Below, one piece after another: positions 1,321 to 62,246 of a stretch of 64,000 nt of DNA; position 1 is the first letter of the stretch; each line of letters starts with the position of its first letter. The stretch covers positions 186,001 to 250,000 of the IMG/VR virus record IMGVR_UViG_3300036770_008729; one strand, 5' to 3'. The position numbers and the translations under genes are program-made. The notes beneath the pieces are model-generated. The model had not been told where the DNA came from. It saw only the letters and a list, made by a program, of their open reading frames with translations, and searched no databases.

Positions 1321-1827
1321 TTACTTCTTAATAACACTAAAATCATTTCTTAAATAATCATCAAAGTTCATCACTCTCTTTTTTGTATTATCTGTCTGTC
1401 CTTGACCTGCTGTAAAGTCTTGTCTTTTAGAAAAAATATCTTTCAGTGATTTTAAACTAATTCTTTTTTTTCTTGATTTCTTACCAGTTCTTGGTCCGTG
1501 ATTAGAACCCATTTCTGTTGGGATTTTCTGAAACACTCTATTTGCACCACTTGGATTATAGGGTATCGAAACATCACCTGATCCAACAGTTCCACCTTGT
1601 GATGCCCAATTAGGACCAATAGTTGCGCCTGCAAGTCCAGATGGTTGTGAATTAACAACAGCACCCATACCACCAGGACTAATACCACCAGTAGCTGAGG
1701 TATCTTCTAGTATTTCATATTCTTTGAAATTTATTAATTCCATGACTTTTTCAAGTAATATAAAATTCTTCTCTTTTTTGAGTTTCCATTTTAAATCATA
1801 TAATTCAAAAAGTGATAAATTTTTCAT
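1321..1827 (-). CDS. Hypothetical Gly-rich protein with CTS-like segment (MELINFKEYEILE)
   Basis: ORF track; TTTAATATATA motif just upstream. Confidence 0.75.
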   Translation of the reverse strand: MKNLSLFELYDLKWKLKKEKNFILLEKVMELINFKEYEILEDTSATGGISPGGMGAVVNSQPSGLAGATIGPNWASQGGTVGSGDVSIPYNPSGANRVFQKIPTEMGSNHGPRTGKKSRKKRISLKSLKDIFSKRQDFTAGQGQTDNTKKRVMNFDDYLRNDFSVIKK

Positions 1828-1896
1828 AAGTTATATATTAAATATCAACAACTACTAATTTTGAGATATATATATTTCAAATATTAACTCTTTTAG

Positions 1897-2571
1897 ATGG
1901 ATAGAATAAAAAAACTCGAAAATATAAAATTGATGAAAGAGTTAGATTTTATAGAATCCGAGTTCAATTACAAAAATGAAGTAATATGTGAAGCTGATAC
2001 AAGCTTTCTTAAAACCGTCAATGCTTATCTAGATATTCATCCAGAATTAAAAAAACTTTTTGACGAAAAGATTAACAGAAAGATAGAGGAAATGTTACAG
2101 AAAAAAACACAAGAGGAAAATGATCAATCAGAAAGTGAATTGGCCAACGATGAATTTGACTTGGCTACAGAATTACATTCTGAACAGCAAGAAGAAAAAG
2201 AAGAAATTGTTCAGAATGAAGAAAATTCAACAGATTTTCGAAATGAAAAGTTAAAAAAACTTTACAGAGAGATTGCTAAACTAACACATCCAGATAAAGT
2301 TAAAAATAATAAATTAAATTCTCTCTATCTTAAAGCCACATCATTTTATGATGAAAATAACATTTTTGGTATTTATGCAATTTGCAATGAACTCGAAATA
2401 TATTACGAAATAGACGAAAATGATAATGTTTTTTTGGTTGAAAAAATAAGCAACCTAAAACAAAGAATTAGTTTTTTAGAATCAACTTTTACTTGGAAGT
2501 GGAAACACACGGATGATTCAAAAGAAAGAGAGACTATAATAATAAGATATATTTCATCACAATTATCTTAA
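1897..2571 (+). CDS. J-domain-like (DnaJ/HscB-type) protein
   Basis: LYREIAKLTHPDK with HPD motif. Confidence 0.7.
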   Translation: MDRIKKLENIKLMKELDFIESEFNYKNEVICEADTSFLKTVNAYLDIHPELKKLFDEKINRKIEEMLQKKTQEENDQSESELANDEFDLATELHSEQQEEKEEIVQNEENSTDFRNEKLKKLYREIAKLTHPDKVKNNKLNSLYLKATSFYDENNIFGIYAICNELEIYYEIDENDNVFLVEKISNLKQRISFLESTFTWKWKHTDDSKERETIIIRYISSQLS

Positions 2572-3236
2572 CTTACGTTTATCTTAACATTTCTTGTATT
2601 AATCAATTCTTCTAGTTCATCTTTTCTAAATATCTTTTTGAAATATTCATTTTCTTTTTTTGGATCTACTAATTCCCATTCATTACCGTTTGAAGTTTGA
2701 TATTCATATTTTTCATTTCCATCTTCTATTTGTATATTTTTAGAAGATAGCTTTGAATAAAAGTTATTTATGTTTTCTAAAGCTTCATAAAGTTCAATAT
2801 CAGACCAACCCTGTGATATGACTTCACCATTTTTATCTTTAATCTCATCCCAGTATTGAAATAGTAGATAGATTGGGTTGATTGGTGGATTTGGAATAGT
2901 CTCTATATCAAAGGCCTCAGATCCATGAATAAACATAAATTTACAAGGCTTATTAATAAATGTTTGAAAGTCATCAGTATATTGTATGGGAGAAAGTCTC
3001 AATTTTATCGAGGTTAATGCATTAATAAAATCAGTTTTCTTTGCTAAGTCCTCTAAATCAATTTTAACAGAAAAGTCGGATTTTGGTAAATTAAACTTAT
3101 CGTGAAAATCCAATCTATTCATAGAAGATAATAGATCGTTCTTAAATACAGTCAATGATTCAGAAAGGTCAAATTGATTAAAAAAATCAATATTCAATGA
3201 TTCCGAAAACTTTTTATATGATTTGATGTATCTCAT
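2568..3236 (-). CDS. Hypothetical protein with CTS-like N-terminus
   Basis: MRYIKSYKKFSES; late-type motif upstream. Confidence 0.8.
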   Translation of the reverse strand: MRYIKSYKKFSESLNIDFFNQFDLSESLTVFKNDLLSSMNRLDFHDKFNLPKSDFSVKIDLEDLAKKTDFINALTSIKLRLSPIQYTDDFQTFINKPCKFMFIHGSEAFDIETIPNPPINPIYLLFQYWDEIKDKNGEVISQGWSDIELYEALENINNFYSKLSSKNIQIEDGNEKYEYQTSNGNEWELVDPKKENEYFKKIFRKDELEELINTRNVKINVS

Positions 3237-3252
3237 TAAAATGAAATATTGG

Positions 3253-3272
3253 TTTTAATATATATATTAAAA
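3253..3272. promoter_or_regulatory. Palindromic TTTTAATATATATATTAAAA, putative bidirectional late promoter
   Basis: Perfect 20-bp palindrome between two divergent CTS-type genes. Confidence 0.55.
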
Positions 3273-3287
3273 TATTTATGCAATTAA

Positions 3288-4673
3288 ATGAAGTGGCTCA
3301 GAAACTATCAATTATATAAAGAATCTAAAAGTGATACATACTCTAGTAAAAGCCTAATTCATGAAGTATGTGTTAGTATGGTTCTGTTAAATAATCAATT
3401 TTTAGATAACATTCTAGATAGAGGATTAAAAGCTAGATACTCAGAAAACTCTCAAATATTTTTAACCGATCTTAAGAATCTTGTATTGGCTAAAAATAGA
3501 TTGAATTTAGGTAAGTTCATAGAAGGTGATAAGTGTGTAGTAGATGATGAGGTATCAAAAATAAACATTCTTTTCGATGGATTAAAATTTTCAATAGAGG
3601 AAGATTGGGATAAATTAGTTAACGCAAGAATAACTGCAAGAAACATTATAGATAAACTACTACCTGATGAAAAATTAGAATCAGATAAAATAAAAACAAT
3701 ATATTGGGTAGGACCAAATAAAGATAAGGAACACCAAGAAGATATTGTTTTAGAAACATTAGATGGTAAACAATATTCTTTTTATTTAGATAAAAACCTT
3801 TCAAATCAAAAAACAGCTTCTTTTAATCTATTTGCTGATGATTTAATTGGTAAAGACATAGAAAAACTTTATAGTGAAGAATATTTAAATAAATGGGACA
3901 AACTTACTCAACAATGGATAACAACACTCTATGAGAATTCTAACAAAAATATTCAAATGCATATTGAGAAGTTCATCGACCCAAAAAGAATTGATACTTT
4001 AGGTTATTTTGAATACTTCGATATAAGACATCAGGATCCACGATTTAAGCATTTGGGAGAATTTATAAAAGAATTCAATAAAAATATTCTTAAATTTTCA
4101 GATTTAATGAATGAAATTTGGAAAAATAGAGATGTTTGTTTTTTAGATTCTGATAGAGTTTACAAAGAATGGATGGAAACAAAAGTAGTCATACTAAACT
4201 CTAAAATTCTTGAAAACTTAATAACATCATCACTAAAAACTAATTTTGCAGATGACATTCAGAAAGTTGAAAATAACTTTAAGTTAGCAGGAGGAACTGT
4301 AAAAATGAAACTTTTCAAGACTCTAGTTGAAAAGATGGGATGTTTAGAAAGACCAATTTACTTTTTAGGAAATAACGGCAATTCTTTTCATTTAATACCA
4401 CAGAGAAACTTTTTTAGAGATAATTATGACGATTTAAATATAAAATTTGATTATCATGTGAATTTCTCTGTAAGTGAAGAAGAAGAGAATAACGATTTTA
4501 TAATTAGAATTATTCTAGAATTAGAAGATGAAGTTCTTATAAAAATGAATATAAATGTCAAATTTACTGGTGGTGAAATGTCTGGTAAATTATCAGCAAA
4601 ATACAGATACGAATTATCCGATAGTTTCAACTACATAGTATCTAAAAAACTTACAGAAAATAAATCTGAGTAA
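3288..4673 (+). CDS. Hypothetical protein with CTS-like N-terminus
   Basis: 461-aa ORF, MKWLRNYQLYKES. Confidence 0.85.
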   Translation: MKWLRNYQLYKESKSDTYSSKSLIHEVCVSMVLLNNQFLDNILDRGLKARYSENSQIFLTDLKNLVLAKNRLNLGKFIEGDKCVVDDEVSKINILFDGLKFSIEEDWDKLVNARITARNIIDKLLPDEKLESDKIKTIYWVGPNKDKEHQEDIVLETLDGKQYSFYLDKNLSNQKTASFNLFADDLIGKDIEKLYSEEYLNKWDKLTQQWITTLYENSNKNIQMHIEKFIDPKRIDTLGYFEYFDIRHQDPRFKHLGEFIKEFNKNILKFSDLMNEIWKNRDVCFLDSDRVYKEWMETKVVILNSKILENLITSSLKTNFADDIQKVENNFKLAGGTVKMKLFKTLVEKMGCLERPIYFLGNNGNSFHLIPQRNFFRDNYDDLNIKFDYHVNFSVSEEEENNDFIIRIILELEDEVLIKMNINVKFTGGEMSGKLSAKYRYELSDSFNYIVSKKLTENKSE

Positions 4674-28227: not shown

Positions 28228-28908
28228 TTATTTACTTTTTCTAAAAGATTCGAAGTTTTTAACCCATTTTTTAGATTCTGTTGTAGACATTGATTTAACT
28301 ATACCTTCAAGCTCTAACAAAGTCTTTTTATAATCAGTGTGTAAGATTGCAGTTCCACCAGCCGATGTAAACTTCTCAACATATTTAGGTCTATCATCAA
28401 TTAATATGTCTGTTTTACCTTCAGCAGCTTTACCTTTATCAACTGTTATAATTACTTGGTCAACCATTCCTTCAAAATGTTCTTTTACCCAATCTTTCTT
28501 TTCAATAACAGATGGATTATTCAAATCATTTTCATCACCAACAGGCGCTGATAATATATTAGGTAATTTGCCAGTCAATTCCGCAGCCTTAGCAACCATT
28601 TCTTTTGCACCAGGCATTAGTGGTAAGTTTCTATAGAAACCAGGTTTTGCAGCTATACTAAAGACTTTAGAAGTATATTTATTGAAAGACTTTTTAAGCT
28701 CTTTAACTGGACTATTTGGATCTTTTTCTAATTCTGCCTTGAATTTAGTTTTGATATCATCATCAACTAATCCTTTGTAGTCTTGAAACTTGGTTTCAAT
28801 TAGATTGTCTAAATCGGCTCTTAGTTGTATTATCTCTGGATTTTTTTTAAGACCACCATCCATATCGGCTAAAACGCCATCTAAGTCAAAAAATATTCTT
28901 GTTTCCAT
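28228..28908 (-). CDS. HAD-family 5'(3')-nucleotidase (NT5C-like)
   Basis: FFDLDGVLAD and ILIDDRPKY motifs. Confidence 0.85.
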   Translation of the reverse strand: METRIFFDLDGVLADMDGGLKKNPEIIQLRADLDNLIETKFQDYKGLVDDDIKTKFKAELEKDPNSPVKELKKSFNKYTSKVFSIAAKPGFYRNLPLMPGAKEMVAKAAELTGKLPNILSAPVGDENDLNNPSVIEKKDWVKEHFEGMVDQVIITVDKGKAAEGKTDILIDDRPKYVEKFTSAGGTAILHTDYKKTLLELEGIVKSMSTTESKKWVKNFESFRKSK

Positions 28909-29408
28909 TATTTAAAATCTTCTTTTTTAATATCACCAATTGAGCCAAATGAATCAGCAAATCCAGGTGTTTTTTTATTCTCCACATTATTTGCAATAGT
29001 TATATGAAAATATCTTTCTGACTCAGGATTAGTTAAACCAAGTTGTTCATAGATTGAATCTACAAAAGATTTTATCTCTTCTTGATTTTGAACCGCAACT
29101 ACAAAACTTTTCTTTCCTTTTTCTGGTCTTTCCGCAAAGGTTGTTTGGCCTAATACAATTTTAGGCATTTCCATTTTTGGAAGTCCTTCTTTAAGTTTAT
29201 CTTTATTTTGTTTACAGTTAGCTATAGAAGTTAAGGTTATATGCAACTTATCTTCAGCTAAAGGAAAATAAGACTTAGCTTCTTCATTTCCCTCATAAAT
29301 ATTTTTAATTTCGGATTTAGTTGTGTTATCTAACTTTAGAAGAAGAGCCGCCTCAAAAACTATACAATTATCACCTGTAAAATCTTCATATAATTTTAAA
29401 TATTTCAT
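28908..29408 (-). CDS. 2H phosphoesterase with CTS-like N-terminus
   Basis: Two HxT motifs (LHITL, FHITI); MKYLKLYEDF. Confidence 0.75.
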   Translation of the reverse strand: MKYLKLYEDFTGDNCIVFEAALLLKLDNTTKSEIKNIYEGNEEAKSYFPLAEDKLHITLTSIANCKQNKDKLKEGLPKMEMPKIVLGQTTFAERPEKGKKSFVVAVQNQEEIKSFVDSIYEQLGLTNPESERYFHITIANNVENKKTPGFADSFGSIGDIKKEDFK

Positions 29409-31664: not shown

Positions 31665-33359
31665 ATGAAATGGATTAAAACTAGAAAACAATTTTTGATA
31701 GAAGCTATCGAGGATGAAATATTCCCTAGACAAGCTGAAGCGATTAAAAGGACTTGGGGTGAAAAATATTTAAAAATGACCAAGCCTCCTGTATCAAATG
31801 AACTTAAAAAATATGAAGGTAAATGGAAATTATCCGAAGAAGATAAATTAAAAATGCTAGGATCCTTCTTTCAATGTGATATGAAGGTCATTTTTGATAA
31901 TATTGCTAGTTTACCAGATAAGTTTTGTTATACGATTGCTCAATCAATTAGTATTCCACAAACTCCAGAGCCTGAAAAGTATGAAGTAGTTCTAAAAGAC
32001 TTCAATATGAAAGAACCTTCTATTGACCAAATTGTAGCAATTTTTGATAACATTTTCCGAAAATTAAATGTTAATGAAACAATTAGTGATTCTATGATTC
32101 AAAAAGATGAATCCGGAAGACCAATTAGAGATTCAGAAGGACAGATGGTAAAGGTTGCAAAAGAAAAAGGATCTCCTATTTTTACTAATAGTTGCACTAA
32201 CATTACTTCTTTCTGTGATGATTACAACAGATGTTATCCAGATGAAAAAGTAGATACAAATATTTTCACTGAAAATAATATAAAAAGTTTAAGAAACTTA
32301 GCAAAAGAAGATTGTAACGGTAAATTAAAAGTAGATTTTGAAATTTTTAACAAAGATCTTTACTTATCATTTTCTCACAATGAGAAGGACATATTAAATA
32401 TGTCTATATCAAAGTTCTACAATTCTTGTCAAAATCTTTATGATGGAGGATACAGAGAACAATTATTAGGTAATATATTTGATCCTAACTCAGCTCCAGC
32501 ATTTATGACATTTGATACTCCTATTTTCTGGGGAGATGAAAAGGTATCAGATCAATTACCTCTTTCAAGAACAGTAATAAGAAATATTGAGAATTTTGAT
32601 GGGTCTAGTCGAGGTATTTTCTTTGATAGAACTTATCCTGATAGATGTGAAAAAGTATTCAAAGAGTTATTAGTTAAGTATAGCAAAATGCAACAAACAA
32701 TAACAGATAGAGATTCTGTTACTTACTTATTTACACCAGACATCGATCCATCAGACACAGGAGTTAAAACTCCTTATATGGATAGATTAGGTGTTGATAG
32801 AAAACCAATGATTGGAGTAAATTGTAAAGCACTTTACTTATCAAGAGTAGGTGATTGGTCTGGTATAAAGATTTCACCAAATGCAAAGATTAAAGAATTA
32901 GTGGTTGAAACAACCGAAATTCCTCAGAACTTATTTGACCTTAAATTAAACTTAGATTGGATTAAATTTAAGTATTTACATTTGAAAGATTTAAAACCAT
33001 TTGGTGGTTTATTCACTGATTCAGTTGCTTTTGATAAATGTAAATTAAAGAATGAAGTTCTTCAAGAAAGAAAAGAAACTAAGAAGTTACAATTAATCAG
33101 TTGTGACATCGATGCGATTGATTTGTCTGGTTTCTCTAAATTAGAAGAGTTACACTTATTGTTAACTTTAAAAGATATAGATGAACTTAAAAGAACACTT
33201 ACAGGAACTAAACTAAAAAAGTTAGTTATCTCTGATGAAATATTAGGATTCTCTAAAAAAGATAGAAAAATGAGAATGTCTGAAGAAGCTTCTCAATTCA
33301 TCGAAGGATTAAAAAGAACTGGTGTGTCAGTAGAAATAAAAGGAATTTATAATAAATAA
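31665..33359 (+). CDS. Hypothetical protein with CTS-like N-terminus and LRR-like C-terminus
   Basis: MKWIKTRKQFLIE; LxxLxL repeats. Confidence 0.75.
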   Translation: MKWIKTRKQFLIEAIEDEIFPRQAEAIKRTWGEKYLKMTKPPVSNELKKYEGKWKLSEEDKLKMLGSFFQCDMKVIFDNIASLPDKFCYTIAQSISIPQTPEPEKYEVVLKDFNMKEPSIDQIVAIFDNIFRKLNVNETISDSMIQKDESGRPIRDSEGQMVKVAKEKGSPIFTNSCTNITSFCDDYNRCYPDEKVDTNIFTENNIKSLRNLAKEDCNGKLKVDFEIFNKDLYLSFSHNEKDILNMSISKFYNSCQNLYDGGYREQLLGNIFDPNSAPAFMTFDTPIFWGDEKVSDQLPLSRTVIRNIENFDGSSRGIFFDRTYPDRCEKVFKELLVKYSKMQQTITDRDSVTYLFTPDIDPSDTGVKTPYMDRLGVDRKPMIGVNCKALYLSRVGDWSGIKISPNAKIKELVVETTEIPQNLFDLKLNLDWIKFKYLHLKDLKPFGGLFTDSVAFDKCKLKNEVLQERKETKKLQLISCDIDAIDLSGFSKLEELHLLLTLKDIDELKRTLTGTKLKKLVISDEILGFSKKDRKMRMSEEASQFIEGLKRTGVSVEIKGIYNK

Positions 33360-33360
33360 T

Positions 33361-34995
33361 ATGAAATATCTAAAACTATTTGAAGCTTTCGAATCGACTA
33401 TATTAAGTAAAACTTTATCTTTCATCAAAGATGAAGAGTCTAAGAAACAATTCATGTTTGCACTAGACAAGATTTGTTCTACAATTGATTATCCTAAATC
33501 TGAGTTAAAAGATGAATACTTTCAATACTTATCATTTTACCCAGCACTTAAACTAAGTGCTAAAACAGGTGATGAACCTTGTGAAGCTTTATCACGTGAT
33601 TCTTATCCAGACTATGCAGTTGATGGGGCAAAGTGTAAAGGAGGTAAAGTATTAAGAAAGTGGGGAGCAAGAACAAGAGAAGTTGAATGTAGTATATGTA
33701 AAGGAACTGGTGTTAAACCAAAGAAACCTGAAATTAAGTTAGTTAAGTTTTGGTTTTCAACAGAAGGTAAATATATTGCTGTTACAGCAGTTGATGGCTT
33801 AATAAGAAACACAACGACTTCATCAACCGCGAGAGGGTATTCTAAAGACTATCAAGATTATATAGTAGTTAACACCACTGAAGATTCTAGAGAACTACAA
33901 ACTGGAATGATAGTTAGAGTTACTATTAATGGAAGACCTACTATTTGTTATATTGTTAAAGATAGAAATACTTATCCATATGCAATACAAGATGAACACA
34001 GTGGATCCACACCAGATAACATACCTTCTAGAAACTGGAGGAATTTTGGACATAGTTCTTGGCACTTATCAAGAGGTGAATACAGAGGAACAATTGAAAT
34101 ACTTGAACCAAAAAGTAAAGAAGAGGTTATTGTAGAACCAAATCCTTATACTTGGAATGCAACGCTTAGCTTATCTGGTTATTCAGGTATGAAAGTAGAT
34201 ATTTATTCTGATGTTCAAGAAAAAATTAAGGATGCAAACTTTGCTATTGTTTTAGATTTCGGTAAGATGAAACAATCAGAATTCAAAACTACTTATTCAA
34301 CGAGAAGTGAAAGAGAAGAATCTAGAACTGGTGCATTAGCATTAGAGAAACCTGAAGATATAAAAGCAACTAACATTGAAAGATATATTAAAAGTTTATC
34401 TGATAAAGTTGCAAGTGGAGATGAATTAACAAAAGTAACAAGAGTTATTCCAAGATTAATGGGTGGAAGAAATATTTTGCTTTATATTGGTATGAATAGA
34501 AATCTTTCAACTATTGATAGTTTAGCTACACGACTTTATAGATTTATTACAGAAGATGAGGACAATAAAGAATACAATGCAAGAGAAATAGTAGCAACAA
34601 TAAAAAACTCATACAAACAAAATCTACAATTTACTACTGATTTAAATGAAGTTTTAGATGAAGTAAGAAAACAATTACAAAAACCAGGAAAAGAAGCTTA
34701 TTTATCAACATTTGACAAAATGTTAGAGATATCACAAAAGATAAATGATAAAGTATTTTCAACAGAAGTTAAATCTATTGAAGATATTGAATACATCTAT
34801 CAAAAATTGAGGACAATTCAAAATATGTTACAATCCAGTCGTAATCCAGCAAATAGATTGAGATACTTTATGGAAAGATTAAGTTATCTAACTACTGATA
34901 GATGTGTATCTAGAATTTTAGAAATTGACCAAGATGAAATACCAAGTATAATTGAAGGTCTAGAATCAATTGGAAGATTTGTTGAGAGAGTTTAA
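33361..34995 (+). CDS. Hypothetical protein with CTS-like N-terminus and CxxCxGxG Zn motif
   Basis: MKYLKLFEAFES; CSICKGTG. Confidence 0.8.
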   Translation: MKYLKLFEAFESTILSKTLSFIKDEESKKQFMFALDKICSTIDYPKSELKDEYFQYLSFYPALKLSAKTGDEPCEALSRDSYPDYAVDGAKCKGGKVLRKWGARTREVECSICKGTGVKPKKPEIKLVKFWFSTEGKYIAVTAVDGLIRNTTTSSTARGYSKDYQDYIVVNTTEDSRELQTGMIVRVTINGRPTICYIVKDRNTYPYAIQDEHSGSTPDNIPSRNWRNFGHSSWHLSRGEYRGTIEILEPKSKEEVIVEPNPYTWNATLSLSGYSGMKVDIYSDVQEKIKDANFAIVLDFGKMKQSEFKTTYSTRSEREESRTGALALEKPEDIKATNIERYIKSLSDKVASGDELTKVTRVIPRLMGGRNILLYIGMNRNLSTIDSLATRLYRFITEDEDNKEYNAREIVATIKNSYKQNLQFTTDLNEVLDEVRKQLQKPGKEAYLSTFDKMLEISQKINDKVFSTEVKSIEDIEYIYQKLRTIQNMLQSSRNPANRLRYFMERLSYLTTDRCVSRILEIDQDEIPSIIEGLESIGRFVERV

Positions 34996-43787: not shown

Positions 43788-44129
43788 TTAAGGCACATTT
43801 CTGTAAATCACCGCAAGCTCCAACACACCATCACCAATCAGCCTCCAATCATCCACATATTTCCTATCAGGATCACCCTCATAAAGAGGTCCCCAATATA
43901 TTATCCTCCCTCCTAAATACGACTCTAAATGCTCTAACTCACCCGACATATCCTCCACACTAAATGCGTAATTATTAGACACACAAGACCAAGCACCATC
44001 AGACATAGTTGAATGATAAACCACAAAACCCTCTTCATCCTTCTTGAAAGCAAATATATCATCTATGTATTGAAACATATCTGAATAAATATCAACACTC
44101 TCATTAAACTTCCTTATATGTTTCATCAC
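43788..44129 (-). CDS. Hypothetical protein with CTS-like N-terminus
   Basis: MKHIRKFNES. Confidence 0.75.
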   Translation of the reverse strand: MMKHIRKFNESVDIYSDMFQYIDDIFAFKKDEEGFVVYHSTMSDGAWSCVSNNYAFSVEDMSGELEHLESYLGGRIIYWGPLYEGDPDRKYVDDWRLIGDGVLELAVIYRNVP

Positions 44130-44141: not shown

Positions 44142-44513
44142 TTAGAAATTATAAATTTCTAGTTTAATCCATCTCCTATCATCATTCACAACAACAGAAT
44201 AACCTATCTTTACTTGAGGGAATTCCATTTCCACTCTTTTAATAGAAACCTTTATCTCATTACAAAATTCCTGCAACCTGGAAGATTTCTGTATATAAGA
44301 ATCTAAAAATTCCACTAAATCTTTATCAACACCCAATTCTCTTGGAGTATTAACCATACTAGGCACCGGTACCATTATCTCATAATATGGATGTGAATAC
44401 TGAGGTGGTAGTTTAACCTCTTTAGCATTCCAATCTTCAATAAGATTGAGAAATATATAATGAATTGATAAAAACCCTTCATTAGATTCATTATATTTCT
44501 TTAAGTGTCTCAT
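44142..44513 (-). CDS. Hypothetical protein with CTS-like N-terminus
   Basis: MRHLKKYNES. Confidence 0.75.
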   Translation of the reverse strand: MRHLKKYNESNEGFLSIHYIFLNLIEDWNAKEVKLPPQYSHPYYEIMVPVPSMVNTPRELGVDKDLVEFLDSYIQKSSRLQEFCNEIKVSIKRVEMEFPQVKIGYSVVVNDDRRWIKLEIYNF

Positions 44514-45267: not shown

Positions 45268-45591
45268 ATGACATCCCAAGAAATCAAACTCTACGGCAGA
45301 CAAATAGTAGAATCAATCACCAAAAGCGATATACCATACACCGATATCAATAAATGTAAAGAATTTCATATCGATTTCTCATTTCCAAGCTGGTCAATAG
45401 GCAAAGGCACAAACCCTAATCATAATATACTCGGACACTCACATATAATACTAACCTGGAACGCAATGCCTCATAAAAAATCCAGCATAATATGGACTAA
45501 CCTAAAACAAATAAAAACAACTGAATTAAACTCAATTATAGAAGCAATTAAAAGAGATATAAAATTAAATACAATACTAATCCATAACTAA
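45268..45591 (+). CDS. Hypothetical protein with tag (KRDIKLNTIL)
   Basis: ORF track. Confidence 0.65.
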   Translation: MTSQEIKLYGRQIVESITKSDIPYTDINKCKEFHIDFSFPSWSIGKGTNPNHNILGHSHIILTWNAMPHKKSSIIWTNLKQIKTTELNSIIEAIKRDIKLNTILIHN

Positions 45592-46083
45592 AAACCATAA
45601 ATGAATAGGTACATAACTATTACAAATAACATCACCATTATCATTTAAATAAGATATACGACTATTTAACTTCGATACCAAATCATATACCCTAGATATC
45701 AACATATCCGTAGAACTAAAATTCTCCTTACTCAACATCTCCTGACTACCAAAATAATTCCAACCCCATAACACAACCGGCTTCATCTCATAATCAGATA
45801 TAACATTTAATATATGCTGAACTAAATCACCTCCTCTTAACGATTCATCTAAATCATTCCAACTCATAGAAGAATAATCACATGCAAATGAGACATCTAT
45901 CACCTTCTTTCCATAAATACTCTTTGGAATACTACCACTTACCATTATAGCAAATCTATGAGGCTCACCATTTAATAAAAATTCCTTTACTCCAATCTTA
46001 CTCTTTATTAAATCAGATAGTGGCCTTAACTCAGATGATTTTAAACCCGATTCAAATATTTTATACTCTTTTATATGTTTCAT
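45577..46083 (-). CDS. Hypothetical protein with CTS-like N-terminus
   Basis: MKHIKEYKIFES. Confidence 0.75.
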   Translation of the reverse strand: MKHIKEYKIFESGLKSSELRPLSDLIKSKIGVKEFLLNGEPHRFAIMVSGSIPKSIYGKKVIDVSFACDYSSMSWNDLDESLRGGDLVQHILNVISDYEMKPVVLWGWNYFGSQEMLSKENFSSTDMLISRVYDLVSKLNSRISYLNDNGDVICNSYVPIHLWFLVMD

Positions 46084-52922: not shown

Positions 52923-53558
52923 TTATATACTGAACTTTCTTACTGCACGTACAGATTGACTATTAGACTTACCAGTGACATTGGCTAACCCAGTTAGAAA
53001 GTTAAAATTACAAGCGTTAACGCTGAAGTTTTCCGTACTACTCCAATATGCACTCAAAGATAATTGAGTACCACCAACAATCTCTAATCCTTGTGCCACT
53101 TCTAACATATTACAATATAGCTTATTAAGCTCATGTATAGCAGGAAGATACCAATCATTTTTCCCACCATTAGTTGATGAATCACACAAAAAAGCAGCAC
53201 CTGAAGTAGCTCCTGACTGTGTAATAATAAATTGTGTATTTACATCACCACTCCACAAACTATTACCCGATGTTTCACTGTTGGTAATATTACTCCAAGC
53301 ACTTGATGCTAAATTTTGCAAATCCACTACAAGATAAGATTGTGTACTACCTGTTAAATACCTATGAAATATAACCCCACCCTGATCACTAACATATTCA
53401 CCAACCTCATAAGTGAATTCTGATGACCCACCAGCATTACTTATTGTCGCTCCACTCTGAATCGATAAATTTCCACCACTTATTCCTAAATATTTATAAC
53501 CAGTTGGAGCTATTCCACCAGTTAGACCATTTTCTGATAAAACTATTCTTTTTGCCAT
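52923..53558 (-). CDS. DUF1566 (Lcl-type C-lectin-like) domain protein with shared fibre N-module
   Basis: DWYLPAIHEL, YWSSTE, VRAVRKF; MAKRIVL..APTGY. Confidence 0.8.
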   Translation of the reverse strand: MAKRIVLSENGLTGGIAPTGYKYLGISGGNLSIQSGATISNAGGSSEFTYEVGEYVSDQGGVIFHRYLTGSTQSYLVVDLQNLASSAWSNITNSETSGNSLWSGDVNTQFIITQSGATSGAAFLCDSSTNGGKNDWYLPAIHELNKLYCNMLEVAQGLEIVGGTQLSLSAYWSSTENFSVNACNFNFLTGLANVTGKSNSQSVRAVRKFSI

Positions 53559-54937: not shown

Positions 54938-55477
54938 TTAAAAATTCAATTTAGGTTTTAAAATTGTTCCACCTTTCTGATTAGACTTCCAATCAGATGC
55001 TGAGCTATGTGTCTTATCTTTTTGTTTATCAAAACCAAAAGAGGTATATGAACTTTTAGCAGTCATACCAATTTTCGCCAAGTGTTCGAATTTTTCTTGA
55101 TCCATTTCACCCACAGTAATTATAACAGCCTTTATAATGCTTTTAGTTTCTTCACCAAAGTCTTGGAGATTCCTGTTGATTCCATCTCTTCTATCTTGAA
55201 AGTATTGTCGAGCTTCTAAATATGGAGTTCTTTCATCAAGCTTCACATCATTTGATACTTCATTTGTAAATACAAGACAAGCTGCTAAAAACTTTTTTTG
55301 TGTTGATTTATCTTCAATTGACTTTTCAATAGTATTTAGTGGTTTACTCATCTGATTCGCAACTGCTGTTGTTGAAACACCACCTAAAAGTGCAATACTT
55401 GCTAGTAGATTATGATACCAAGCTTCATTGATACTTTGATATTCATTATAATTTTTTACAAACTTCATCTTTTTCAT
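54938..55477 (-). CDS. CTS-type protein with TM-like segment (start MKKMKF at 55477)
   Basis: MKFVKNYNEYQSINE; late motif at about 55500. Confidence 0.75.
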   Translation of the reverse strand: MKKMKFVKNYNEYQSINEAWYHNLLASIALLGGVSTTAVANQMSKPLNTIEKSIEDKSTQKKFLAACLVFTNEVSNDVKLDERTPYLEARQYFQDRRDGINRNLQDFGEETKSIIKAVIITVGEMDQEKFEHLAKIGMTAKSSYTSFGFDKQKDKTHSSASDWKSNQKGGTILKPKLNF

Positions 55478-55522: not shown

Positions 55523-55572
55523 TTTTTTTGTATTTAATAGGCACAAAAAAAGGAGAAAGTTTAATTTCTCCT
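55523..55572 (-). terminator. Repeat R3 with minus-strand terminator aggagaaa-ttaaac-tttctcc-ttttttt
   Basis: Same hairpin in R2 and R4, each downstream of a minus-strand gene. Confidence 0.8.
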
Positions 55573-55591: not shown

Positions 55592-56110
55592 TTAACTCTT
55601 TTTTGTTAACCATTCTTTGTTAATACGCTCACGTTCACGATTCACATAATAGCGTTTGGTATATATATACTTTTCTCTTAATGACTCAGGTACTTTTGAA
55701 TATTCCACTTGAGTTTCAGGAAAAATTAATGAAGAATTTACTGATATTTCAGGTAAAGTTCTTAGCTGAGGTTTTACTAATTCTTTATTTACTTTTGATT
55801 CCCATTCACTATGATACTCCGACATTACTGATTCTGGTTCCATATCTTCTCTATACATAACATATAATTTTAATCTATATGAACCCATTTGCATAGAATC
55901 AGATATTGCAAAATTGACAGTTTTTTCATCATTAAGGTATAAATTTTCATTCTCATTTAAAGAATTAACAATATTAACTTTCCAACCATTTTTTTCTAAA
56001 TGTAATTGTAAGCCTTCTATAAAATCTTTCATTTTATGATCAATGTGTTCAGAAGTCTTTTGTATAGATAACCAGTTTTCAAATAACTTAATATACTTTA
56101 GATTTTTCAT
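55592..56110 (-). CDS. Hypothetical protein with CTS-like N-terminus
   Basis: MKNLKYIKLFEN. Confidence 0.75.
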   Translation of the reverse strand: MKNLKYIKLFENWLSIQKTSEHIDHKMKDFIEGLQLHLEKNGWKVNIVNSLNENENLYLNDEKTVNFAISDSMQMGSYRLKLYVMYREDMEPESVMSEYHSEWESKVNKELVKPQLRTLPEISVNSSLIFPETQVEYSKVPESLREKYIYTKRYYVNRERERINKEWLTKKS

Positions 56111-56295: not shown

Positions 56296-57606
56296 TTATT
56301 GTTCATCTGATAGAGAGTAGTTGATTTCATCCAGAATTGAATCGGTTGGGAATTTTTCTCCTCTTTTATTATAAAAGAAACCATCTCTAAATTTTACCAA
56401 TTCGGAATCATCATTCATATTATCAGGTAATACACAATCATTCCATAATTCGATAATTTGATTAGGTGTAGTAGTTTTGCCAATTTCCACTCTTAATACT
56501 TCGAGTTCTTCTGGAATTTCAATTTGGGGTTCTTGCTCTGATTTAGCTCCTTGTTCTGCTTTTATACGAGCTTCTATTTCTTTGGCATGATCTTCTAAGT
56601 TCTTTGCTGAGGCATCTGCCTTTCTAATAGGATTGCCTTTTTCGTCCTTAATTAGATTGCCGTCTTTATCTAAAAGAAAGTCTTCTTCATATTCTGGTAG
56701 CAACCCTAACTTTTTACGTTGTTCTAAATCTTTTTTATCTCTTTCTCTAATACCAGCAGCGGCTCTTTTATAAGTCTCTGGATTTAATTCTTCATTAACG
56801 AATGATTCAAATAATTTTAGGTATTTCATATTATTTTTACTTTCAGCAACTGATTTTTCAGACTCATCAATTACTCTTTTAAGTTCAGCTGTATTATCAA
56901 CACTAACAACTTCATCAAATCCTTCTTTTGATAAAACATCTTTTATTTTTTCTTCATCAAAAGGAATGCCTTTATCATCTTGTAAGTCATATGATGTAAA
57001 CATTCTATCAAATGCAGCAGGTGGTATAGTTTTAGATTTACCTTTAGCTTTCATTTCTTCTGATCTTTTAGCTGCCATTTTTTTGATAATTTCTTCAGCT
57101 CCTTTGAAGTTAAAAACAACTGCTACTTTATGATATTCGCCTTCAACACCTTCAATAACTTTAAGTGCTCCTTTTCTTGAACCAGAGTTCATATTGGTCA
57201 TATCGACTACAATATTTTCTTTTCCTTTACCTTCGGCAATTCTTTTGTTAAATATATCTTGAATTTTACCGTTAGCTTCTAAAACTCTATCATAAGAAAG
57301 TGGTGCCCAAGTCATATAAGCTGGTGATTTAATAACGGTGCCATATTTTTCATTTTTATCACCTTCTTTTTCAACATCTTTAATGGGTAATGAGAAAAGG
57401 TCATCATATGTCCAACCATACTCTGCATACTCTTCAGCAACTTTTTCGACAATATCATCTCTATTTATTACAAATGGTTGTATTTCACCAAATTTGGTTT
57501 TTATCCAAGTTGATTTACCTACAGATGGAGGTCCAATAAGAACATATATTGTTTTATCTTTAACTTCTTCACCTTCAAATACTCTGAAATTTTTAATATT
57601 CCTCAT
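56296..57606 (-). CDS. P-loop kinase (AAA_33 / PNK-like) with N-terminal and internal CTS-like motifs
   Basis: GPPSVGKSTW, INRDDI, VVDMTNM..SR; MRNIKNFRVFE and MKYLKLFESFVNEE. Confidence 0.8.
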   Translation of the reverse strand: MRNIKNFRVFEGEEVKDKTIYVLIGPPSVGKSTWIKTKFGEIQPFVINRDDIVEKVAEEYAEYGWTYDDLFSLPIKDVEKEGDKNEKYGTVIKSPAYMTWAPLSYDRVLEANGKIQDIFNKRIAEGKGKENIVVDMTNMNSGSRKGALKVIEGVEGEYHKVAVVFNFKGAEEIIKKMAAKRSEEMKAKGKSKTIPPAAFDRMFTSYDLQDDKGIPFDEEKIKDVLSKEGFDEVVSVDNTAELKRVIDESEKSVAESKNNMKYLKLFESFVNEELNPETYKRAAAGIRERDKKDLEQRKKLGLLPEYEEDFLLDKDGNLIKDEKGNPIRKADASAKNLEDHAKEIEARIKAEQGAKSEQEPQIEIPEELEVLRVEIGKTTTPNQIIELWNDCVLPDNMNDDSELVKFRDGFFYNKRGEKFPTDSILDEINYSLSDEQ

Positions 57607-59835: not shown

Positions 59836-59839
59836 TTGT

Positions 59840-60640: not shown

Positions 60641-60692
60641 ATGTGAAATATATATGAAATAAGAAAAAAAGTTTAATTATAGATATAATCTA

Positions 60693-60699
60693 GTTAGTG
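60693..60699 (+). other. attI-like crossover core G|TTAGTG
   Basis: Complementary to CACTAAC of the first attC; no palindromic arm on the recombinase side. Confidence 0.65.
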
Positions 60700-60957
60700 T
60701 CAATATTGCCTATGCTTATTTACTACCTCTTTACCGCAGCTTTTACACGTCCACTTACCATACTGCTCGCCATTAACCCCAGTTCGGCTAACGCATTGGC
60801 AATACTTTTTGCTTCGCCCACTAACATCGTGTATGCGTAAGGCTGCTTCGTACCCTGCAATAAAATCTCGTACTTTTTGTTCGTACCATCCTGCATCGTC
60901 TATCTTATATCTGAAACTTTCAGCATATAATTCAGCTTGTTTTTTTATATCTTCCAT
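60700..60957 (-). CDS. Cassette 1 ORF, C-terminal Zn-ribbon-like
   Basis: CQC...WTCKSCG; starts inside its attC. Confidence 0.7.
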   Translation of the reverse strand: MEDIKKQAELYAESFRYKIDDAGWYEQKVRDFIAGYEAALRIHDVSGRSKKYCQCVSRTGVNGEQYGKWTCKSCGKEVVNKHRQY

Positions 60958-61012
60958 TCTAATTAAATTTATCGTTAATAAATCGCCCTACGCATACACG
61001 CAGCCGTTATAC
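60819..61012 (+). other. attC-like site 1 (194 bp)
   Basis: CACTAAC-at-16 bp arm...arm-cagcc-GTTATAC. Confidence 0.8.
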
Positions 61013-61282
61013 GCAATTATATAACACCCAATCGTGAATAAATTTTATTGAAGAATTAAAAGCATCAATCCAATCAGGATAACATCCACAATCTTCTTCT
61101 ACCCATTCACCATTTTGCTTCCAATAAACATATCCACGCCAACATATGCCAACATCTTCCAGCTTATATCCATCAGCAAGAACTTCAATAAAAATTCCTT
61201 TATCTGAATAACTGCGTATAACAGCAGGTATATTCAATTGCGGTTTCTGTGCTTCATTCAAGTTTTGTTCTTCTATGCTCAT
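61007..61282 (-). CDS. Cassette 2 ORF (start MSIEEQ)
   Basis: Subset of ORF-track 61007..61468; stop lies in the R box. Confidence 0.65.
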   Translation of the reverse strand: MSIEEQNLNEAQKPQLNIPAVIRSYSDKGIFIEVLADGYKLEDVGICWRGYVYWKQNGEWVEEDCGCYPDWIDAFNSSIKFIHDWVLYNCV

Positions 61283-61346
61283 TTGTTCTAAATTTAAGTT
61301 TTGTAATTTTAAGTCCGCAACTAAATATACCTGCAAAACGTTATGT
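61216..61346 (+). other. attC-like site 2 (131 bp)
   Basis: GTATAAC-a-20 bp arm...arm-aaaac-GTTATGT. Confidence 0.8.
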
Positions 61347-61415
61347 GTAAGTGTTCCGTTCATCTTACTAATCAACATTTTGGTTGAAAATTTTAAAAGA
61401 AAAATCCCACACACA

Positions 61416-62246
61416 TTAAATGATTTTAATATATTTTGGTGGTATATTATCATATGTGAAAAAACCACCCTTGAATCTCAAATCTTTATATAAAGATAAT
61501 CCTTTGAAGTTTTCTATTCTTAAATTAACATATTCACCACCTTTATCACCAACTAACTCTTGTTTTATTGAAGACATCCATTCTTCATTAGGCGATAAAT
61601 AAATTCTCTCAGGATAAAAACTTCTAGTATTTTTTGTTTTTGGTATTAAACCATATTTCATTATCTTATCTAAATTTTTGGAGTCGGTTGTGTGATAAAG
61701 ATATTCACCTTCAAAATTAACTTTGTCATCATAATTTGGTTCTATCATTATGGATATTCTATCACTAGATATTAAGGTTTTTTCTATATCATTTTTATCA
61801 GTTAGTTTTTCACCTGGTTTAAGATTTACGACAGATATAAAATATCCCATATTATCTATTAATGATATAAGACCAAGTGATAATTCCTTATTATTAAAAT
61901 CTGTAAATATTGATATATCACCATAATTAAATTCACTTATTTGTTTTTCTAAATCCGAGATAGTCTTGTCTATATCAACCCCTCCTTTAATTAGACTTTT
62001 TGTTAATGAATCATTTTTGTCTTTATAGCCTTTTAACATTCTATTCATCGTAAATTTATCGGTGATGATTTGATAATATGGTGAATTCACATCTTCGCCA
62101 AAATTAGATTTTTTATTTAGACCATTTCCAATAAAGAAATTATCTAATTTTTTTATAACAATATCAAGTTTATCTGATTTTAGTGTTTCGTTAAGTAAAT
62201 TAAATTTTCTAAAACTGTTTATATATTTTCTCATTTCCTTACTCAT
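61416..62246 (-). CDS. Cassette 3 ORF: CTS-type protein with C-terminal Tpt1/ART-like domain
   Basis: MRKYINSFRKFNLLNE; YLYHTT...I.KYGLIP...RIYLS. Confidence 0.7.
   Translation of the reverse strand: MSKEMRKYINSFRKFNLLNETLKSDKLDIVIKKLDNFFIGNGLNKKSNFGEDVNSPYYQIITDKFTMNRMLKGYKDKNDSLTKSLIKGGVDIDKTISDLEKQISEFNYGDISIFTDFNNKELSLGLISLIDNMGYFISVVNLKPGEKLTDKNDIEKTLISSDRISIMIEPNYDDKVNFEGEYLYHTTDSKNLDKIMKYGLIPKTKNTRSFYPERIYLSPNEEWMSSIKQELVGDKGGEYVNLRIENFKGLSLYKDLRFKGGFFTYDNIPPKYIKII

What the first reader, a model, noticed from the sequence alone, without database searches (positions are those of the whole stretch)
1321..62246. T4-CTS-like N-terminal packaging tag on about 15 unrelated proteins
Seen: M[KR]x[IL]KxY/F..E starts at 2568, 3288, 28908, 31665, 33361, 36474, 43788, 44142, 45577, 54938, 55592, 56296 and 61416, weaker at 1321 and 15665. 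Known: T4 internal proteins use the capsid-targeting sequence MKTYQEFIAE, cleaved after Glu by the gp21 protease. Inference: a large, interchangeable set of head-packaged proteins ejected into the host, including enzymes.
Basis: partly seen in the sequence, partly recalled or inferred. Interest (0 to 1): 0.7.

Follow-up and report, generated by a model that had tools for sequence, protein, structure and literature searches.

The report
Shared address tag on huge-phage proteins
About one protein in seven of this roughly 600-kb freshwater phage carries the same 10-12-residue peptide at one end; it most likely addresses the protein to the T4-type capsid during assembly, which would let the packaged protein cargo of huge phages be read from sequence alone.

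Summary
Twelve of the 15 named sites are true N-terminal tags (consensus M-K-[YH]-[LI]-K-x-[FY]-[ENK]-x-F-E). Sites 15665, 36474 and 61416 are not, and 1321 is doubtful.

- **Scale:** genome-wide about 60 of 401 genes carry the tag, against about 0.1 expected by chance. A 642-kb relative has about 100 tagged genes. The motif is common in viral contigs and almost absent from 185,579 bacterial and archaeal genomes.
- **Nature of the tag:** it is selected at protein level. It sits on more than 100 unrelated, mostly orphan, acidic proteins and is flexible in two AlphaFold models.
- **One-tag rule:** in one kinase family the tag sits at either the N- or the C-terminus, rarely both.
- **Link to heads:** tagged genes share the promoter motif of the head genes, and conserved genes inside the head module are tagged. 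The clade has gp23-type capsid and gp21-type protease genes. Sister lineages and T4 carry the T4-form tag instead.

The best reading is a lineage-specific capsid-targeting or cargo-loading peptide (confidence about 0.5). Packaging, cleavage and ejection are not shown. The record is a 281-kb piece of a 598-kb contig and lacks its own head genes.

The parts
2568..3236 (-). 222-aa orphan protein; N-terminal tag MRYIKSYKKFSES at 3204-3236
   Evidence: score 17.6. AATATATA lies 24 nt upstream. The orthologue in LR756502 keeps the tag.
3288..4673 (+). 461-aa protein; tag MKWLRNYQLYKES at 3288-3320
   Evidence: score 12.6. It is 73% identical to an LR756502 orthologue that is also tagged. Atlas features lie near restriction-endonuclease clusters, which is a lead only.
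28228..28908 (-). 226-aa NT5C-type 5'-nucleotidase with a C-terminal tag KWVKNFESF at 28240-28269
   Evidence: score 15.7, in the last 13 residues. Pfam NT5C, E 6.8e-12.
28908..29408 (-). 166-aa orphan; tag MKYLKLYEDF at 29376-29408
   Evidence: score 21.6. AATATATA lies 18 nt upstream.
31665..33359 (+). 564-aa protein; variant tag MKWIKTRKQFLIEA at 31665-31697
   Evidence: score 11.0. The variant is conserved in orthologues (MKWIKSREKF, MKWILPRNRF). Its atlas neighbours are viral-only protein clusters.
33361..34995 (+). 544-aa protein conserved across the clade; tag MKYLKLFEAFES at 33361-33393
   Evidence: Score 23.0. It has 242 metagenome homologues that begin MKYLKLFEAFES or MKNLKYI[KQ]LFEAFES. 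In the AlphaFold model (pLDDT 78) residues 1-8 are below 50. Foldseek found no match in the PDB.
43788..44126 (-). 112-aa orphan; tag MKHIRKFNES at 44094-44126 (the ATG one codon inside the GTG-started ORF)
   Evidence: score 21.6. It lies in an operon behind ORF 44142-44513.
44142..44513 (-). 123-aa orphan; tag MRHLKKYNES at 44481-44513
   Evidence: score 23.6. AATATATA lies 18 nt upstream.
45577..46083 (-). 168-aa orphan; tag MKHIKEYKIFES at 46051-46083
   Evidence: score 22.5. AATATATA lies 4 nt upstream.
54938..55468 (-). 176-aa orphan; tag MKFVKNYNEY at 55436-55468 (the true start is the ATG at 55468, not the TTG at 55546)
   Evidence: score 14.7.
55592..56110 (-). 172-aa orphan; long-form tag MKNLKYIKLFENW at 56072-56110
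   Evidence: score 10.9. The same long form occurs in the 544-aa family.
56296..57606 (-). 436-aa ORF with a tag (57574-57606), an AAA_33 kinase domain, a second internal tag MKYLKLFESF (56797-56829) and a 177-aa C-terminal part
   Evidence: Pfam AAA_33 covers residues 22-206. The internal tag scores 21.8. In the AlphaFold model (pLDDT 86) the only segment below 50 is residues 1-14, which is the tag. Homologues carry the tag at either the N- or the C-end.
1321..1827 (-). 168-aa ORF starting MKNLSLFELY: doubtful, probably not a tag
   Evidence: Score 8.3. The orthologue starts MKNLPIVELY and does not keep the pattern.

Best explanation
The motif is a lineage-specific terminal address peptide. 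Its core is [LI]-K-x-[FY]-x-x-[FY]. It usually forms residues 2-11 after the initiator Met and occasionally forms the C-terminal tail.

Proposed mechanism, step by step:
1. Shown: it is a protein-level, modular, flexible tag. It can be gained, lost or moved between the two ends of a protein, and one tag per protein is the rule.
2. Shown: tagged genes belong to the same promoter class as the head genes, and conserved accessory genes of the head module carry the tag.
3. Inferred: the peptide docks the protein to the scaffold/core or to the inner shell of the T4-type prohead while the prohead assembles. In this it acts like the T4 capsid-targeting sequence or an encapsulin cargo-loading peptide.
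4. Inferred: the gp21-type protease then cuts after the Glu that follows the tag. The cargo stays in the head and may enter the host with the DNA.
For: Position specificity and enrichment:
-. Across 3,091 ORFs the strict core motif follows the initiator Met in 7.1%. Its rate is 1.7e-4 per window at C-termini and 1.6e-5 per window internally.

Protein-level selection:
- Synonymous codons at the conserved K, F and E positions follow genome-wide usage.
- The tag is kept in orthologues whose bodies are only 23-57% identical.

Modularity:
- 116 sequence families among 152 tagged proteins.
- Only 4 of 61 tagged proteins in this record and 8 families among 94 in LR756502 hit Pfam.
- In the kinase family: 48 members have only an N-terminal tag, 47 only a C-terminal tag, 5 both; Fisher p 6e-12.
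- In both AlphaFold models the tag is the low-confidence appendage.

Link to T4-type heads:
- gp23-like and gp21-like genes sit next to each other in LR756502.
- 13 of 25 large tag-bearing contigs have a gp23-family gene above the cut-off, including three near-complete genomes of 464-508 kb.
- The head module is conserved in 23 metagenome loci. Its genes h229 and t172, and sometimes the M28 peptidase, are tagged.

Promoter class:
- AATATATA lies upstream of the portal, protease and capsid genes. It precedes 49% and 50% of tagged genes against 17% of untagged genes (p 2e-11 and 1e-6).
- The host-type TAnnTTTG box precedes only 3 of 100 and 2 of 52 tagged genes.

Continuum with T4:
- The T4-form pattern scores 5 hits against 0 in the control in T4 (ipII and ipIII among them), 5 against 0 in pT24 and 18 against 1 in LR756501.

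Glu after the tag:
- The first Glu is at position 8, 9 or 11 in 41 of 52 tags.

T4 precedent:
- That sequence is about 10 aa, is cleaved once and can carry foreign proteins into the head (bioRxiv 10.1101/2021.01.19.427310; PMC5694885).
Against: - No virion, proteomic or cleavage data exist for any member. All members are uncultivated.
- This 281-kb record has no head genes of its own. It is the first part of a 598-kb contig whose remainder I could not read.
- The motif does not match the T4 sequence on the tag matrix.
- C-terminal tags do not fit a simple N-terminal propeptide model.
- Tagged proteins are acidic: pI is below 6 in 87% and 73% of them. The T4 internal proteins are described as highly basic.
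- The AATATATA motif also precedes topoisomerase, Dam methylase and HNH genes, so it is not strictly a late promoter.
- An ECF-type sigma factor, a nucleotidase and kinases carry the tag. These could equally act in the cytoplasm.
- Sixty to a hundred different cargo species per head is without precedent.
- The one complex prediction gave no answer.
Confidence: 0.5

Rival explanations
1. The tag is a docking peptide for a different phage-encoded hub, for example the ClpC-like unfoldase or the DnaK/DnaJ/GrpE set that this phage encodes. It would then act as a degron or as a chaperone-delivery signal that times the life or folding of late proteins.
For: - The record encodes a two-ring ClpC/ClpB-type AAA+ protein, GrpE and probable DnaK and DnaJ. 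The last two are named only from their N-terminal sequences and have conserved counterparts in LR756502.
- A short, flexible terminal peptide that works at either end suits recognition by a hub.
- Iyer et al. suggest that ClpA/ClpX-like chaperones of jumbo phages may act in virion assembly or as translocases (PMC7824862).
Against: - No ClpP gene was looked for.
- It does not explain the tags on genes of the head module, or the parallel with T4-form tags in sister lineages.
- The acidic residues inside the motif are, from my own knowledge, unfavourable for DnaK binding.
- The two ideas need not exclude each other, because an unfoldase could feed cargo into proheads.
Confidence: 0.17
2. The tag targets proteins to some other late infection structure, such as a replication or assembly factory, a membrane patch or the tail or baseplate, rather than to the inside of the head.
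For: It shares the general features of a terminal address peptide and the phage-type promoter class. The predicted helix is amphipathic, with hydrophobic residues at positions 3, 4, 7 and 10.
Against: - Tagged proteins have no transmembrane segments.
- No nucleus-shell or tubulin gene was sought.
- The tagged conserved genes sit in the head module, not in the tail module.
Confidence: 0.12
3. The tag is a sliding-clamp binding motif of the gp45/PIP-box type, which recruits many factors to DNA.
For: - Like PIP boxes, it is a terminal motif that can sit at either end.
- An ECF-type sigma factor ends with the tag. From my own knowledge, T4 gp55 binds the clamp through its C-terminal tail.
- The L-F-E-x-F core resembles, from memory, the C-terminal clamp peptide of the RB69 polymerase.
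Against: - The C-terminal half of the family-B DNA polymerase of LR756502 ends in VVMDIFGGSGF. That is a T4-like clamp tail and not the tag.
- About a hundred orphan acidic proteins and genes of the head module are unlikely clamp clients.
Confidence: 0.05
4. There is no protein function. The shared start would be a nucleotide-level feature, such as a translation-initiation context or a promoter-plus-leader cassette spread by recombination, or else the conserved N-terminus of one fast-evolving paralogue family.
For: - The tag is often directly preceded by the conserved AATATATA motif.
- Codon 3 shows an excess of TAC over TAT: 14 of 27 against 21% genome-wide, p 4e-4.
- One real paralogue family of 25 members exists among the tagged proteins.
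Against: - Synonymous sites at K2, K5, F7, F10 and E11 follow genome codon usage.
- H, Y and W alternate at position 3, and I, L and V at position 4.
- C-terminal copies without a Met are conserved.
- 107 of the 152 tagged proteins are singletons.
- The motif holds across GC contents of 17-45%.
Confidence: 0.04

Closest known systems
T4 capsid-targeting sequence (CTS) of the internal proteins IPII and IPIII, and similar short propeptides of Alt and gp24
   Same: - It is a peptide of about 10 residues after Met-Lys, with hydrophobic or aromatic residues near positions 4 and 7 and a following Glu.
- It is the only thing shared by diverse, fast-evolving proteins.
- The phage has a gp21-type protease and a gp23-type capsid.
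- My own pattern scan recovers T4 ipII and ipIII.
   Different: - The sequence differs. K5 is nearly invariant, there is F at position 10, and T4's MKTYQEFIAE scores -9.5 on the tag matrix.
- There are 60-100 carriers per genome instead of about 3.
- The carriers are acidic rather than basic.
- The tag can sit at the C-terminus.
- Cleavage and packaging are untested.
Encapsulin cargo-loading peptides
   Same: A short terminal peptide addresses unrelated cargo enzymes to the interior of an HK97-fold shell. From my own knowledge such peptides occur at either terminus. The one-tag-per-cargo logic matches the kinase family.
   Different: Encapsulins are cellular compartments that hold one or a few cargo types. 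Their consensus sequence is different, and no protease or DNA is involved. Binding of this tag to the shell has not been tested.
Long N-terminal propeptides of head and ejection proteins in phiKZ, 201phi2-1 and SPN3US
   Same: These are giant phages with a gp21-like protease that cuts after Glu. They have many internal head proteins, and conserved N-termini on diverged paralogues have been proposed to act like a CTS (PMC5694885).
   Different: Those propeptides are mostly 80-160 residues long and specific to a family, and about 8 proteins are processed. Here one 10-12-residue motif is shared by about 100 unrelated proteins.
Phage P1 Dar anti-restriction head proteins
   Same: Several unrelated proteins are incorporated into the head and delivered to the host. 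The literature search that returned PMC9024508 ties that paper to the capsid-targeting-sequence literature; I did not read the paper.
   Different: From my own knowledge, P1 uses ordered, protein-dependent incorporation rather than one shared linear motif.

Membership tests
T4-type capsid-targeting sequence | Short N-terminal peptide shared by otherwise unrelated proteins | tested here: met
   60 of 401 N-termini carry it, and 116 sequence families occur among 152 carriers.
T4-type capsid-targeting sequence | Sequence matches the T4 consensus MKTYQEFIAE | tested here: not met
   The T4, pT24 and LR756501 forms score -9.5 to -0.1 on the tag matrix. Only the coarse pattern M-basic-x-hydrophobic-x-x-aromatic...E is shared.
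T4-type capsid-targeting sequence | The phage encodes a gp21 (S77) prohead protease, a scaffold and a gp23 capsid protein | tested here: inconclusive
   These genes are absent from this truncated 281-kb record. They are present in the tag-bearing relative LR756502 and in 23 related metagenome loci. The S77 Pfam hit in LR756502 is below the cut-off (22.7 bits), but PHROG head maturation protease scores 6e-28.
T4-type capsid-targeting sequence | Removed by cleavage C-terminal to a Glu | not testable with these tools
   The sequence is compatible: the first Glu is at position 8, 9 or 11 in 41 of 52 tags. No proteomic data exist.
T4-type capsid-targeting sequence | Carriers are found inside virions, and the tag is sufficient to package a foreign protein | not testable with these tools
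   All members are uncultivated.
T4-type capsid-targeting sequence | Strictly N-terminal propeptide | tested here: not met
   There are C-terminal copies in the kinase family (47 of 120), in the window's NT5C nucleotidase and in an ECF-type sigma factor.
Encapsulin-like cargo-loading peptide | Terminal peptide at either end, one per cargo | tested here: met
   N-terminal and C-terminal tags are mutually exclusive in the kinase family, p 6e-12.
Encapsulin-like cargo-loading peptide | Binds the inner face of the HK97-fold shell protein | not tested
The one job that ran, protease/scaffold plus tag, gave no answer.
Sliding-clamp binding motif | The replicative polymerase carries the same motif at its C-terminus | tested here: not met
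   The polymerase C-terminal half in LR756502 ends VVMDIFGGSGF.
Host-type sorting signal (Sec, Tat or T9SS-like) | The signal is used by cellular proteins of the host phylum | tested here: not met
   There are 15 matches in 185,579 species genomes, several of them on MAG contigs of Bacteroidota. The tag has no hydrophobic core.

The most novel reading that the evidence does not exclude
A large clade of 350-640-kb freshwater phages loads on the order of a hundred different proteins into each capsid through one universal, portable address peptide. These phages probably infect Bacteroidota. Most of the cargo proteins are orphans, and some are enzymes. Such a cargo bay would be far larger than any described, and its contents could be listed from sequence alone. 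The tag could be moved to either end of any protein. Sister lineages use other leaders on the same enzyme (ENWRKY, RMQKLAGI, MKxFxxFINE), which implies co-evolving tag and receptor pairs across T4-like phages.
Probability: 0.4. Interest if true: 0.85.

Novelty: new variant of a known kind. Interest (0 to 1): 0.75.

Why it matters
- **Function for orphans:** most genes of huge phages have no known function. A sequence tag that marks 10-15% of them as one functional class, probably virion cargo made late, would give a first handle on hundreds of orphan families.
- **Candidate effectors:** it would nominate candidate injected effectors and counter-defence proteins.
- **Why such phages are large:** it would help explain why they need very large heads.
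- **A usable tool:** it would offer a short portable peptide for loading proteins into large capsids.
- **A model system:** the kinase family shows an unusually clean natural case of one tag per protein at either end. This makes a good system for studying how targeting peptides evolve.

Tried and rejected
- **Paralogy.** All-against-all BLAST and phmmer of the tagged proteins without their first 16 residues gave 49 components for 52 proteins and 116 for 152. Rejected.
- **Nucleotide-level signal.** Codon analysis rejects it, apart from an unexplained excess of TAC at codon 3.
- **Host sorting signal.** Rejected by the scan of cellular genomes.
- **Clamp-binding motif.** The polymerase tail differs from the tag.
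- **T4 head genes in this record.** None were found. The explanation is that the record is the first 281 kb of a 598-kb contig. The rest of that contig could not be reached, and the capsid search in metagenomes did not return it.
- **Function of tagged proteins.** Pfam and PHROGs gave almost nothing. The AlphaFold model of the 544-aa protein had no Foldseek match in the PDB. The protein atlas gave only viral hypothetical clusters and one weak lead to restriction endonucleases.
- **Complex prediction.** A run with the protease homologue P0241 and residues 1-40 of a window protein gave no answer, which counts neither for nor against binding.
- **Capsid cleavage site.** The N-terminal alignment of the capsid proteins of T4, LR756502 and pT24 did not place a Glu at the T4 cleavage position, so no protease specificity could be inferred.
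- **RNA data.** No RNA run holds this sequence.
- **Literature.** Searches for the motif strings and for related concepts found no description of this tag.

Full report
**What is in the window**

The window is bases 186,001-250,000 of a 281,114-bp IMG/VR virus record with 30% GC. Twelve begin with a recognisable common peptide.

On a position matrix built from the tags, 11 sites score 11-24, site 1321 scores 8.3, and sites 15665, 36474 and 61416 score below -6. The consensus is M-K-[YH]-[LI]-K-x-[FY]-[ENK]-x-F-E. It comes in a second register, MKHLKxYK[LI]FE[SN], in a long form MKNLKYIKLFE and in a form one residue shorter, M[IK][KI]KxYxxFxE.

**Is it more than chance?**

- In the whole record the regex M[KR].[ILVM][KR].[YFW] has 64 six-frame matches, 50 of them at the first ATG of an ORF of at least 50 aa. 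Second-order Markov shuffles give 2-10 matches in total and 0-1 at a first ATG.
- With the position matrix, 60 of 401 called genes pass a score of 6, against 2 of 1,244 internal Met-started windows.
- Across 3,091 ORFs from this phage, a relative and about 140 metagenomic loci, a strict core motif follows the initiator Met in 7.1%. Its rate is 1.7e-4 per window at C-termini and 1.6e-5 per window internally. Eight of the ten internal cases stand directly after a Met.

**What kind of signal is it?**

*It is selected as protein.* Synonymous codons at the conserved Lys, Phe and Glu positions follow genome-wide usage. Position 3 alternates between Tyr, His and Trp, and position 4 between Leu, Ile and Val. 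One oddity remains: TAC is over-used at codon 3 (p 4e-4).

*It is not a paralogue family.* Without their first 16 residues, 52 tagged proteins fall into 49 BLAST components. The 152 tagged proteins of two genomes fall into 116 phmmer components, with one real family of 25.

*The carriers are mostly orphans.* Only 4 of 61 hit Pfam: a glutamine amidotransferase, an AAA_33 kinase, L5 gp82 and DUF2207_C. In the relative, eight families hit among 94 proteins, including a phage lysozyme, a SET domain, HNH and Toprim.

*Their properties.* The carriers have a median length of 160-190 aa, have no transmembrane segments and are unusually acidic. The pI is below 6 in 87% against 51% of untagged proteins in this record, and in 73% against 56% in the relative.

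*The tag lies outside the fold.* In two AlphaFold models built on deep alignments, the tag is the low-confidence appendage. In the 544-aa protein (window 33361-34995) these are residues 1-8. In the kinase (window 56296-57606) residues 1-14 are the only segment below pLDDT 50 and the first strand starts at residue 18.

**A natural experiment: the kinase family**

The 120 best homologues of the window's kinase are 55-98% identical to it. Their ends differ in a modular way:

| State of the ends | Members |
|---|---|
| Tag at the N-terminus only | 48 |
| Tag just after the kinase domain at the C-terminus only | 47 |
| Tag at both ends | 5 |
| A different N-terminal leader (ENWRKY or RMQKLAGI type) | 10 |
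| None by the strict regex (several are near-misses) | 10 |

In the C-terminal copies the Met is often replaced by Thr, Val, Ile or Ser. The N-terminal and C-terminal states exclude each other (odds ratio 0.04, Fisher p 6e-12). One tag per protein, at either end, is the behaviour expected of a docking or address peptide.

The window's own ORF is a longer form. It runs tag, kinase, a second in-frame tag at 56829, and then a 177-aa domain. No promoter motif precedes the internal ATG.

Two further C-terminal tags exist in this record. One is on the NT5C nucleotidase in the window (28228-28908). The other is on an ECF-type sigma factor outside the window.

**Who else has it?**

The closest relatives, by a baseplate wedge protein, are the huge uncultivated phages LR756502 (642 kb) and LR745206 at 62% identity. 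More distant are LR756504, LR756501, LR756500, the Lak phages of Prevotella and the Tenacibaculum phages pT24 and PTm5.

A relaxed DNA pattern for the tag gave these counts:

| Genome | Matches | Reversed-pattern control |
|---|---|---|
| This record (281 kb) | 41 | 0 |
| LR756502 | 55 | 2 |
| LR745206 | 39 | 0 |
| LR756504 | 38 | 0 |
| LR756500 | 15 | 1 |
| LR756501 | 1 | 1 |
| Lak-B5 | 2 | 2 |
| pT24 | 2 | 0 |

By ORF calling, LR756502 has 100 tagged genes out of 975.

In 110 of the 119 stretches at least one match is a true N-terminal tag, and there are often 2-6 tagged genes within about 10 kb. The GC content of these stretches runs from 17 to 45%. The same pattern found only 15 places in 596 Gb of bacterial and archaeal genomes, six of them on contigs of Bacteroidota MAGs. 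The tag therefore belongs to viruses and is not a host sorting signal.

A near-leaderless TAnnTTTG box sits in front of 44 genes of this record. From my own knowledge this is the -7 element of Bacteroidota promoters, so it points to a host in that phylum.

**Link to the head**

This record has no gp21-type or gp23-type gene, but it is truncated. An identical copy of the window's 544-aa protein lies at the same coordinate on a 598,435-bp JGI contig, and IMG/VR kept only the first 281 kb of that contig as a 'provirus'.

The record is syntenic with only the 382-640-kb part of LR756502. LR756502 has these genes side by side:
- a portal (PHROG E 4e-59);
- a 699-aa head maturation protease with a long C-terminal tail (PHROG E 6e-28; the Pfam S77 hit is below the cut-off);
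- a gp23-family capsid protein (Pfam E 5e-28).

Thirteen of 25 large tag-bearing IMG/VR contigs have a gp23-family gene above the cut-off, including three near-complete genomes of 464-508 kb.

In 23 metagenome loci the module order is conserved: h231, sometimes T157, portal, two reverse-strand genes, protease/scaffold, capsid, h229, M28 peptidase, t172. The small conserved genes h229 and t172 start with the tag or its short form. t172 is extremely acidic and of low complexity. In some lineages the M28 peptidase is tagged too. T157 is tagged in LR756502 but starts nine residues later, without the tag, in four other phages.

**Timing**

Two upstream motifs dominate.
- AATATATA lies 4-31 nt before the ATG. 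It precedes the portal, protease and capsid genes of LR756502. It also precedes 49 of 100 and 26 of 52 tagged genes, against 17% of untagged genes (p 2e-11 and 1e-6).
- When genes in operons are assigned the motif of the gene that heads the operon, 88 of 100 and 44 of 52 tagged genes fall in AATATATA units.
- The host-type TAnnTTTG box precedes only 3 and 2 tagged genes.

The caveat is that AATATATA also precedes topoisomerase, Dam methylase and HNH genes. It is therefore a phage-type promoter class rather than a strictly late one.

**Continuum with T4**

A pattern for the T4 form, M-[KR]-x-x-x-x-[FY]-hydrophobic-x-E, gave these counts:

| Genome | Matches | Control | Form seen |
|---|---|---|---|
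| T4 | 5 | 0 | MKTYQEFIAE |
| pT24 | 5 | 0 | M[KR]xIxxYIxE |
| LR756501 | 18 | 1 | MKxFxxFINE |
| Lak-B5 | 4 | 0 | no common form |

- Two of the T4 hits are ipII and ipIII, both annotated as internal virion proteins.
- In pT24, 7 N-termini fit the regex against 2 of 1,532 internal Met windows.
- T4, pT24 and LR756502 all have gp21/gp23-type heads.

[quoted passage not shown] That sequence is about 10 aa, is cleaved once and can carry foreign proteins into the head (bioRxiv 10.1101/2021.01.19.427310). The T4-type proteases of giant phages all cut after Glu (PMC5694885).

The present motif is not the T4 sequence, which scores -9.5 on the tag matrix. It does share the coarse pattern and a following Glu, which is at position 8, 9 or 11 in 41 of 52 tags.

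**Interpretation**

I commit to a lineage-specific capsid-targeting or cargo-loading peptide, with confidence of about 0.5.
- Shown: modularity, protein-level selection, position at a protein end, the one-tag rule, restriction to viruses, co-occurrence with T4-type heads, tags on head-module genes, and a promoter class shared with the head genes.
- Inferred: docking to the scaffold/core or shell, trimming after Glu, retention in the head, and ejection.

Rival readings:
- **Another phage hub.** The ClpC-like unfoldase and the Hsp70 system encoded here are the main alternative, and this reading could even be part of the same pathway.
- **Another late structure.**
- **Clamp binding.** This is weakened because the polymerase tail of LR756502 is a T4-like MDIF-type tail and not the tag.
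- **Non-protein or paralogy explanations.** These are largely refuted.

The one complex prediction allowed gave no answer and is not evidence either way.

**Novelty**

Searches of the paper library for the motif strings and for related concepts found no description of this tag. I rate it a new variant of a known kind: a T4-type capsid-targeting peptide. It is expanded about thirty-fold, has a different sequence and is able to work from either end. If packaging is confirmed, the size of the cargo set would be unprecedented.

Noticed in passing
whole record; window 33361-34995: The 281-kb 'provirus' record is the first part of a 598,435-bp JGI contig (Ga0310126_0000009). The CheckV estimate of 94% complete is therefore misleading, and the head, polymerase and other core genes probably lie in the part that was cut off. 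The sequence occurs in subsurface and freshwater metagenomes from several studies.
   Followed up: partly
window, e.g. upstream of 3236, 3288, 29408, 44513, 46083; genome-wide: There are two promoter-like classes. AATATATA, often TTAATATATA, lies 4-31 nt before the ATG of 87 genes here and before the head genes of LR756502. A Bacteroidota-type TAnnTTTG box lies only 3-5 nt (sometimes up to about 40 nt) before the ATG of 44 genes, which implies leaderless or near-leaderless mRNAs.
   Followed up: partly
window 21164-23251(-), 46593-48206(-), 52923-53558(-); genome 125007-125576, 276824-277489: A second shared N-terminus, M-P-[KR]-R-[IL]-x-L...P-x-G-[YF], sits on five otherwise different proteins of 189-695 aa. 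All five are preceded by AATATATA. They are possibly fibre or baseplate attachment domains.
   Followed up: no
window 56296-57606(-): The kinase ORF contains a second in-frame tag at 56829, followed by a 177-aa domain. Homologues of 340-430 aa show the same fused layout, and shorter ones stop 12-16 residues after the internal tag. It may be a gene fusion, an internal start or a cleavable two-cargo polyprotein.
   Followed up: partly
homologues P0135, P0197, P0206, P0213, P0216, P0232 of the window kinase: The same kinase carries other N-terminal leaders in other lineages. The ENWR[KR][YF] leader fits the T4-form pattern, and another leader has the form xxRMQ[KQ]LAG[IL]. These may be address tags of other phage groups.
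   Followed up: no
LR756501 (735 kb), pT24, T4 19101-19130: LR756501 has about 18 genes that start MKxFxxFINE, and pT24 has about 7 that start M[KR]xIxxYIxE. T4 gp61.1, a 54-aa hypothetical protein, starts MKTFKEFIKE, which is very close to the ipII/ipIII targeting sequence.
   Followed up: partly
genome 27826-29994, 75819-78205, 82408-84273, 88500-93200, 17205-18479: The phage encodes a ClpC/ClpB-type two-ring AAA+ protein, GrpE, a PrkA/YhbH/SpoVR-like trio and an M28 peptidase. It probably also encodes DnaJ and DnaK, which I named only from their N-terminal sequences. A second M28 peptidase sits next to the capsid gene in relatives.
   Followed up: partly
genome 149159-149770: An ECF-type sigma factor (sigma-70 regions 2 and 4) ends with the tag KWLKNYDLFE. 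If the tag means packaging, a sigma factor would be delivered with the DNA. Alternatively the tail could be a clamp-binding tail like that of T4 gp55.
   Followed up: partly
codon 3 of tagged genes, genome-wide: Tyr at position 3 is encoded by TAC in 14 of 27 cases, against 21% genome-wide (p 4e-4). This is the only sign of a nucleotide-level constraint in the tag.
   Followed up: no
LR756502 120483-121907 and 253958-255391: The family-B DNA polymerase of the relative is split into two genes about 130 kb apart. pT24 also has it in two ORFs with genes inserted between them.
   Followed up: no
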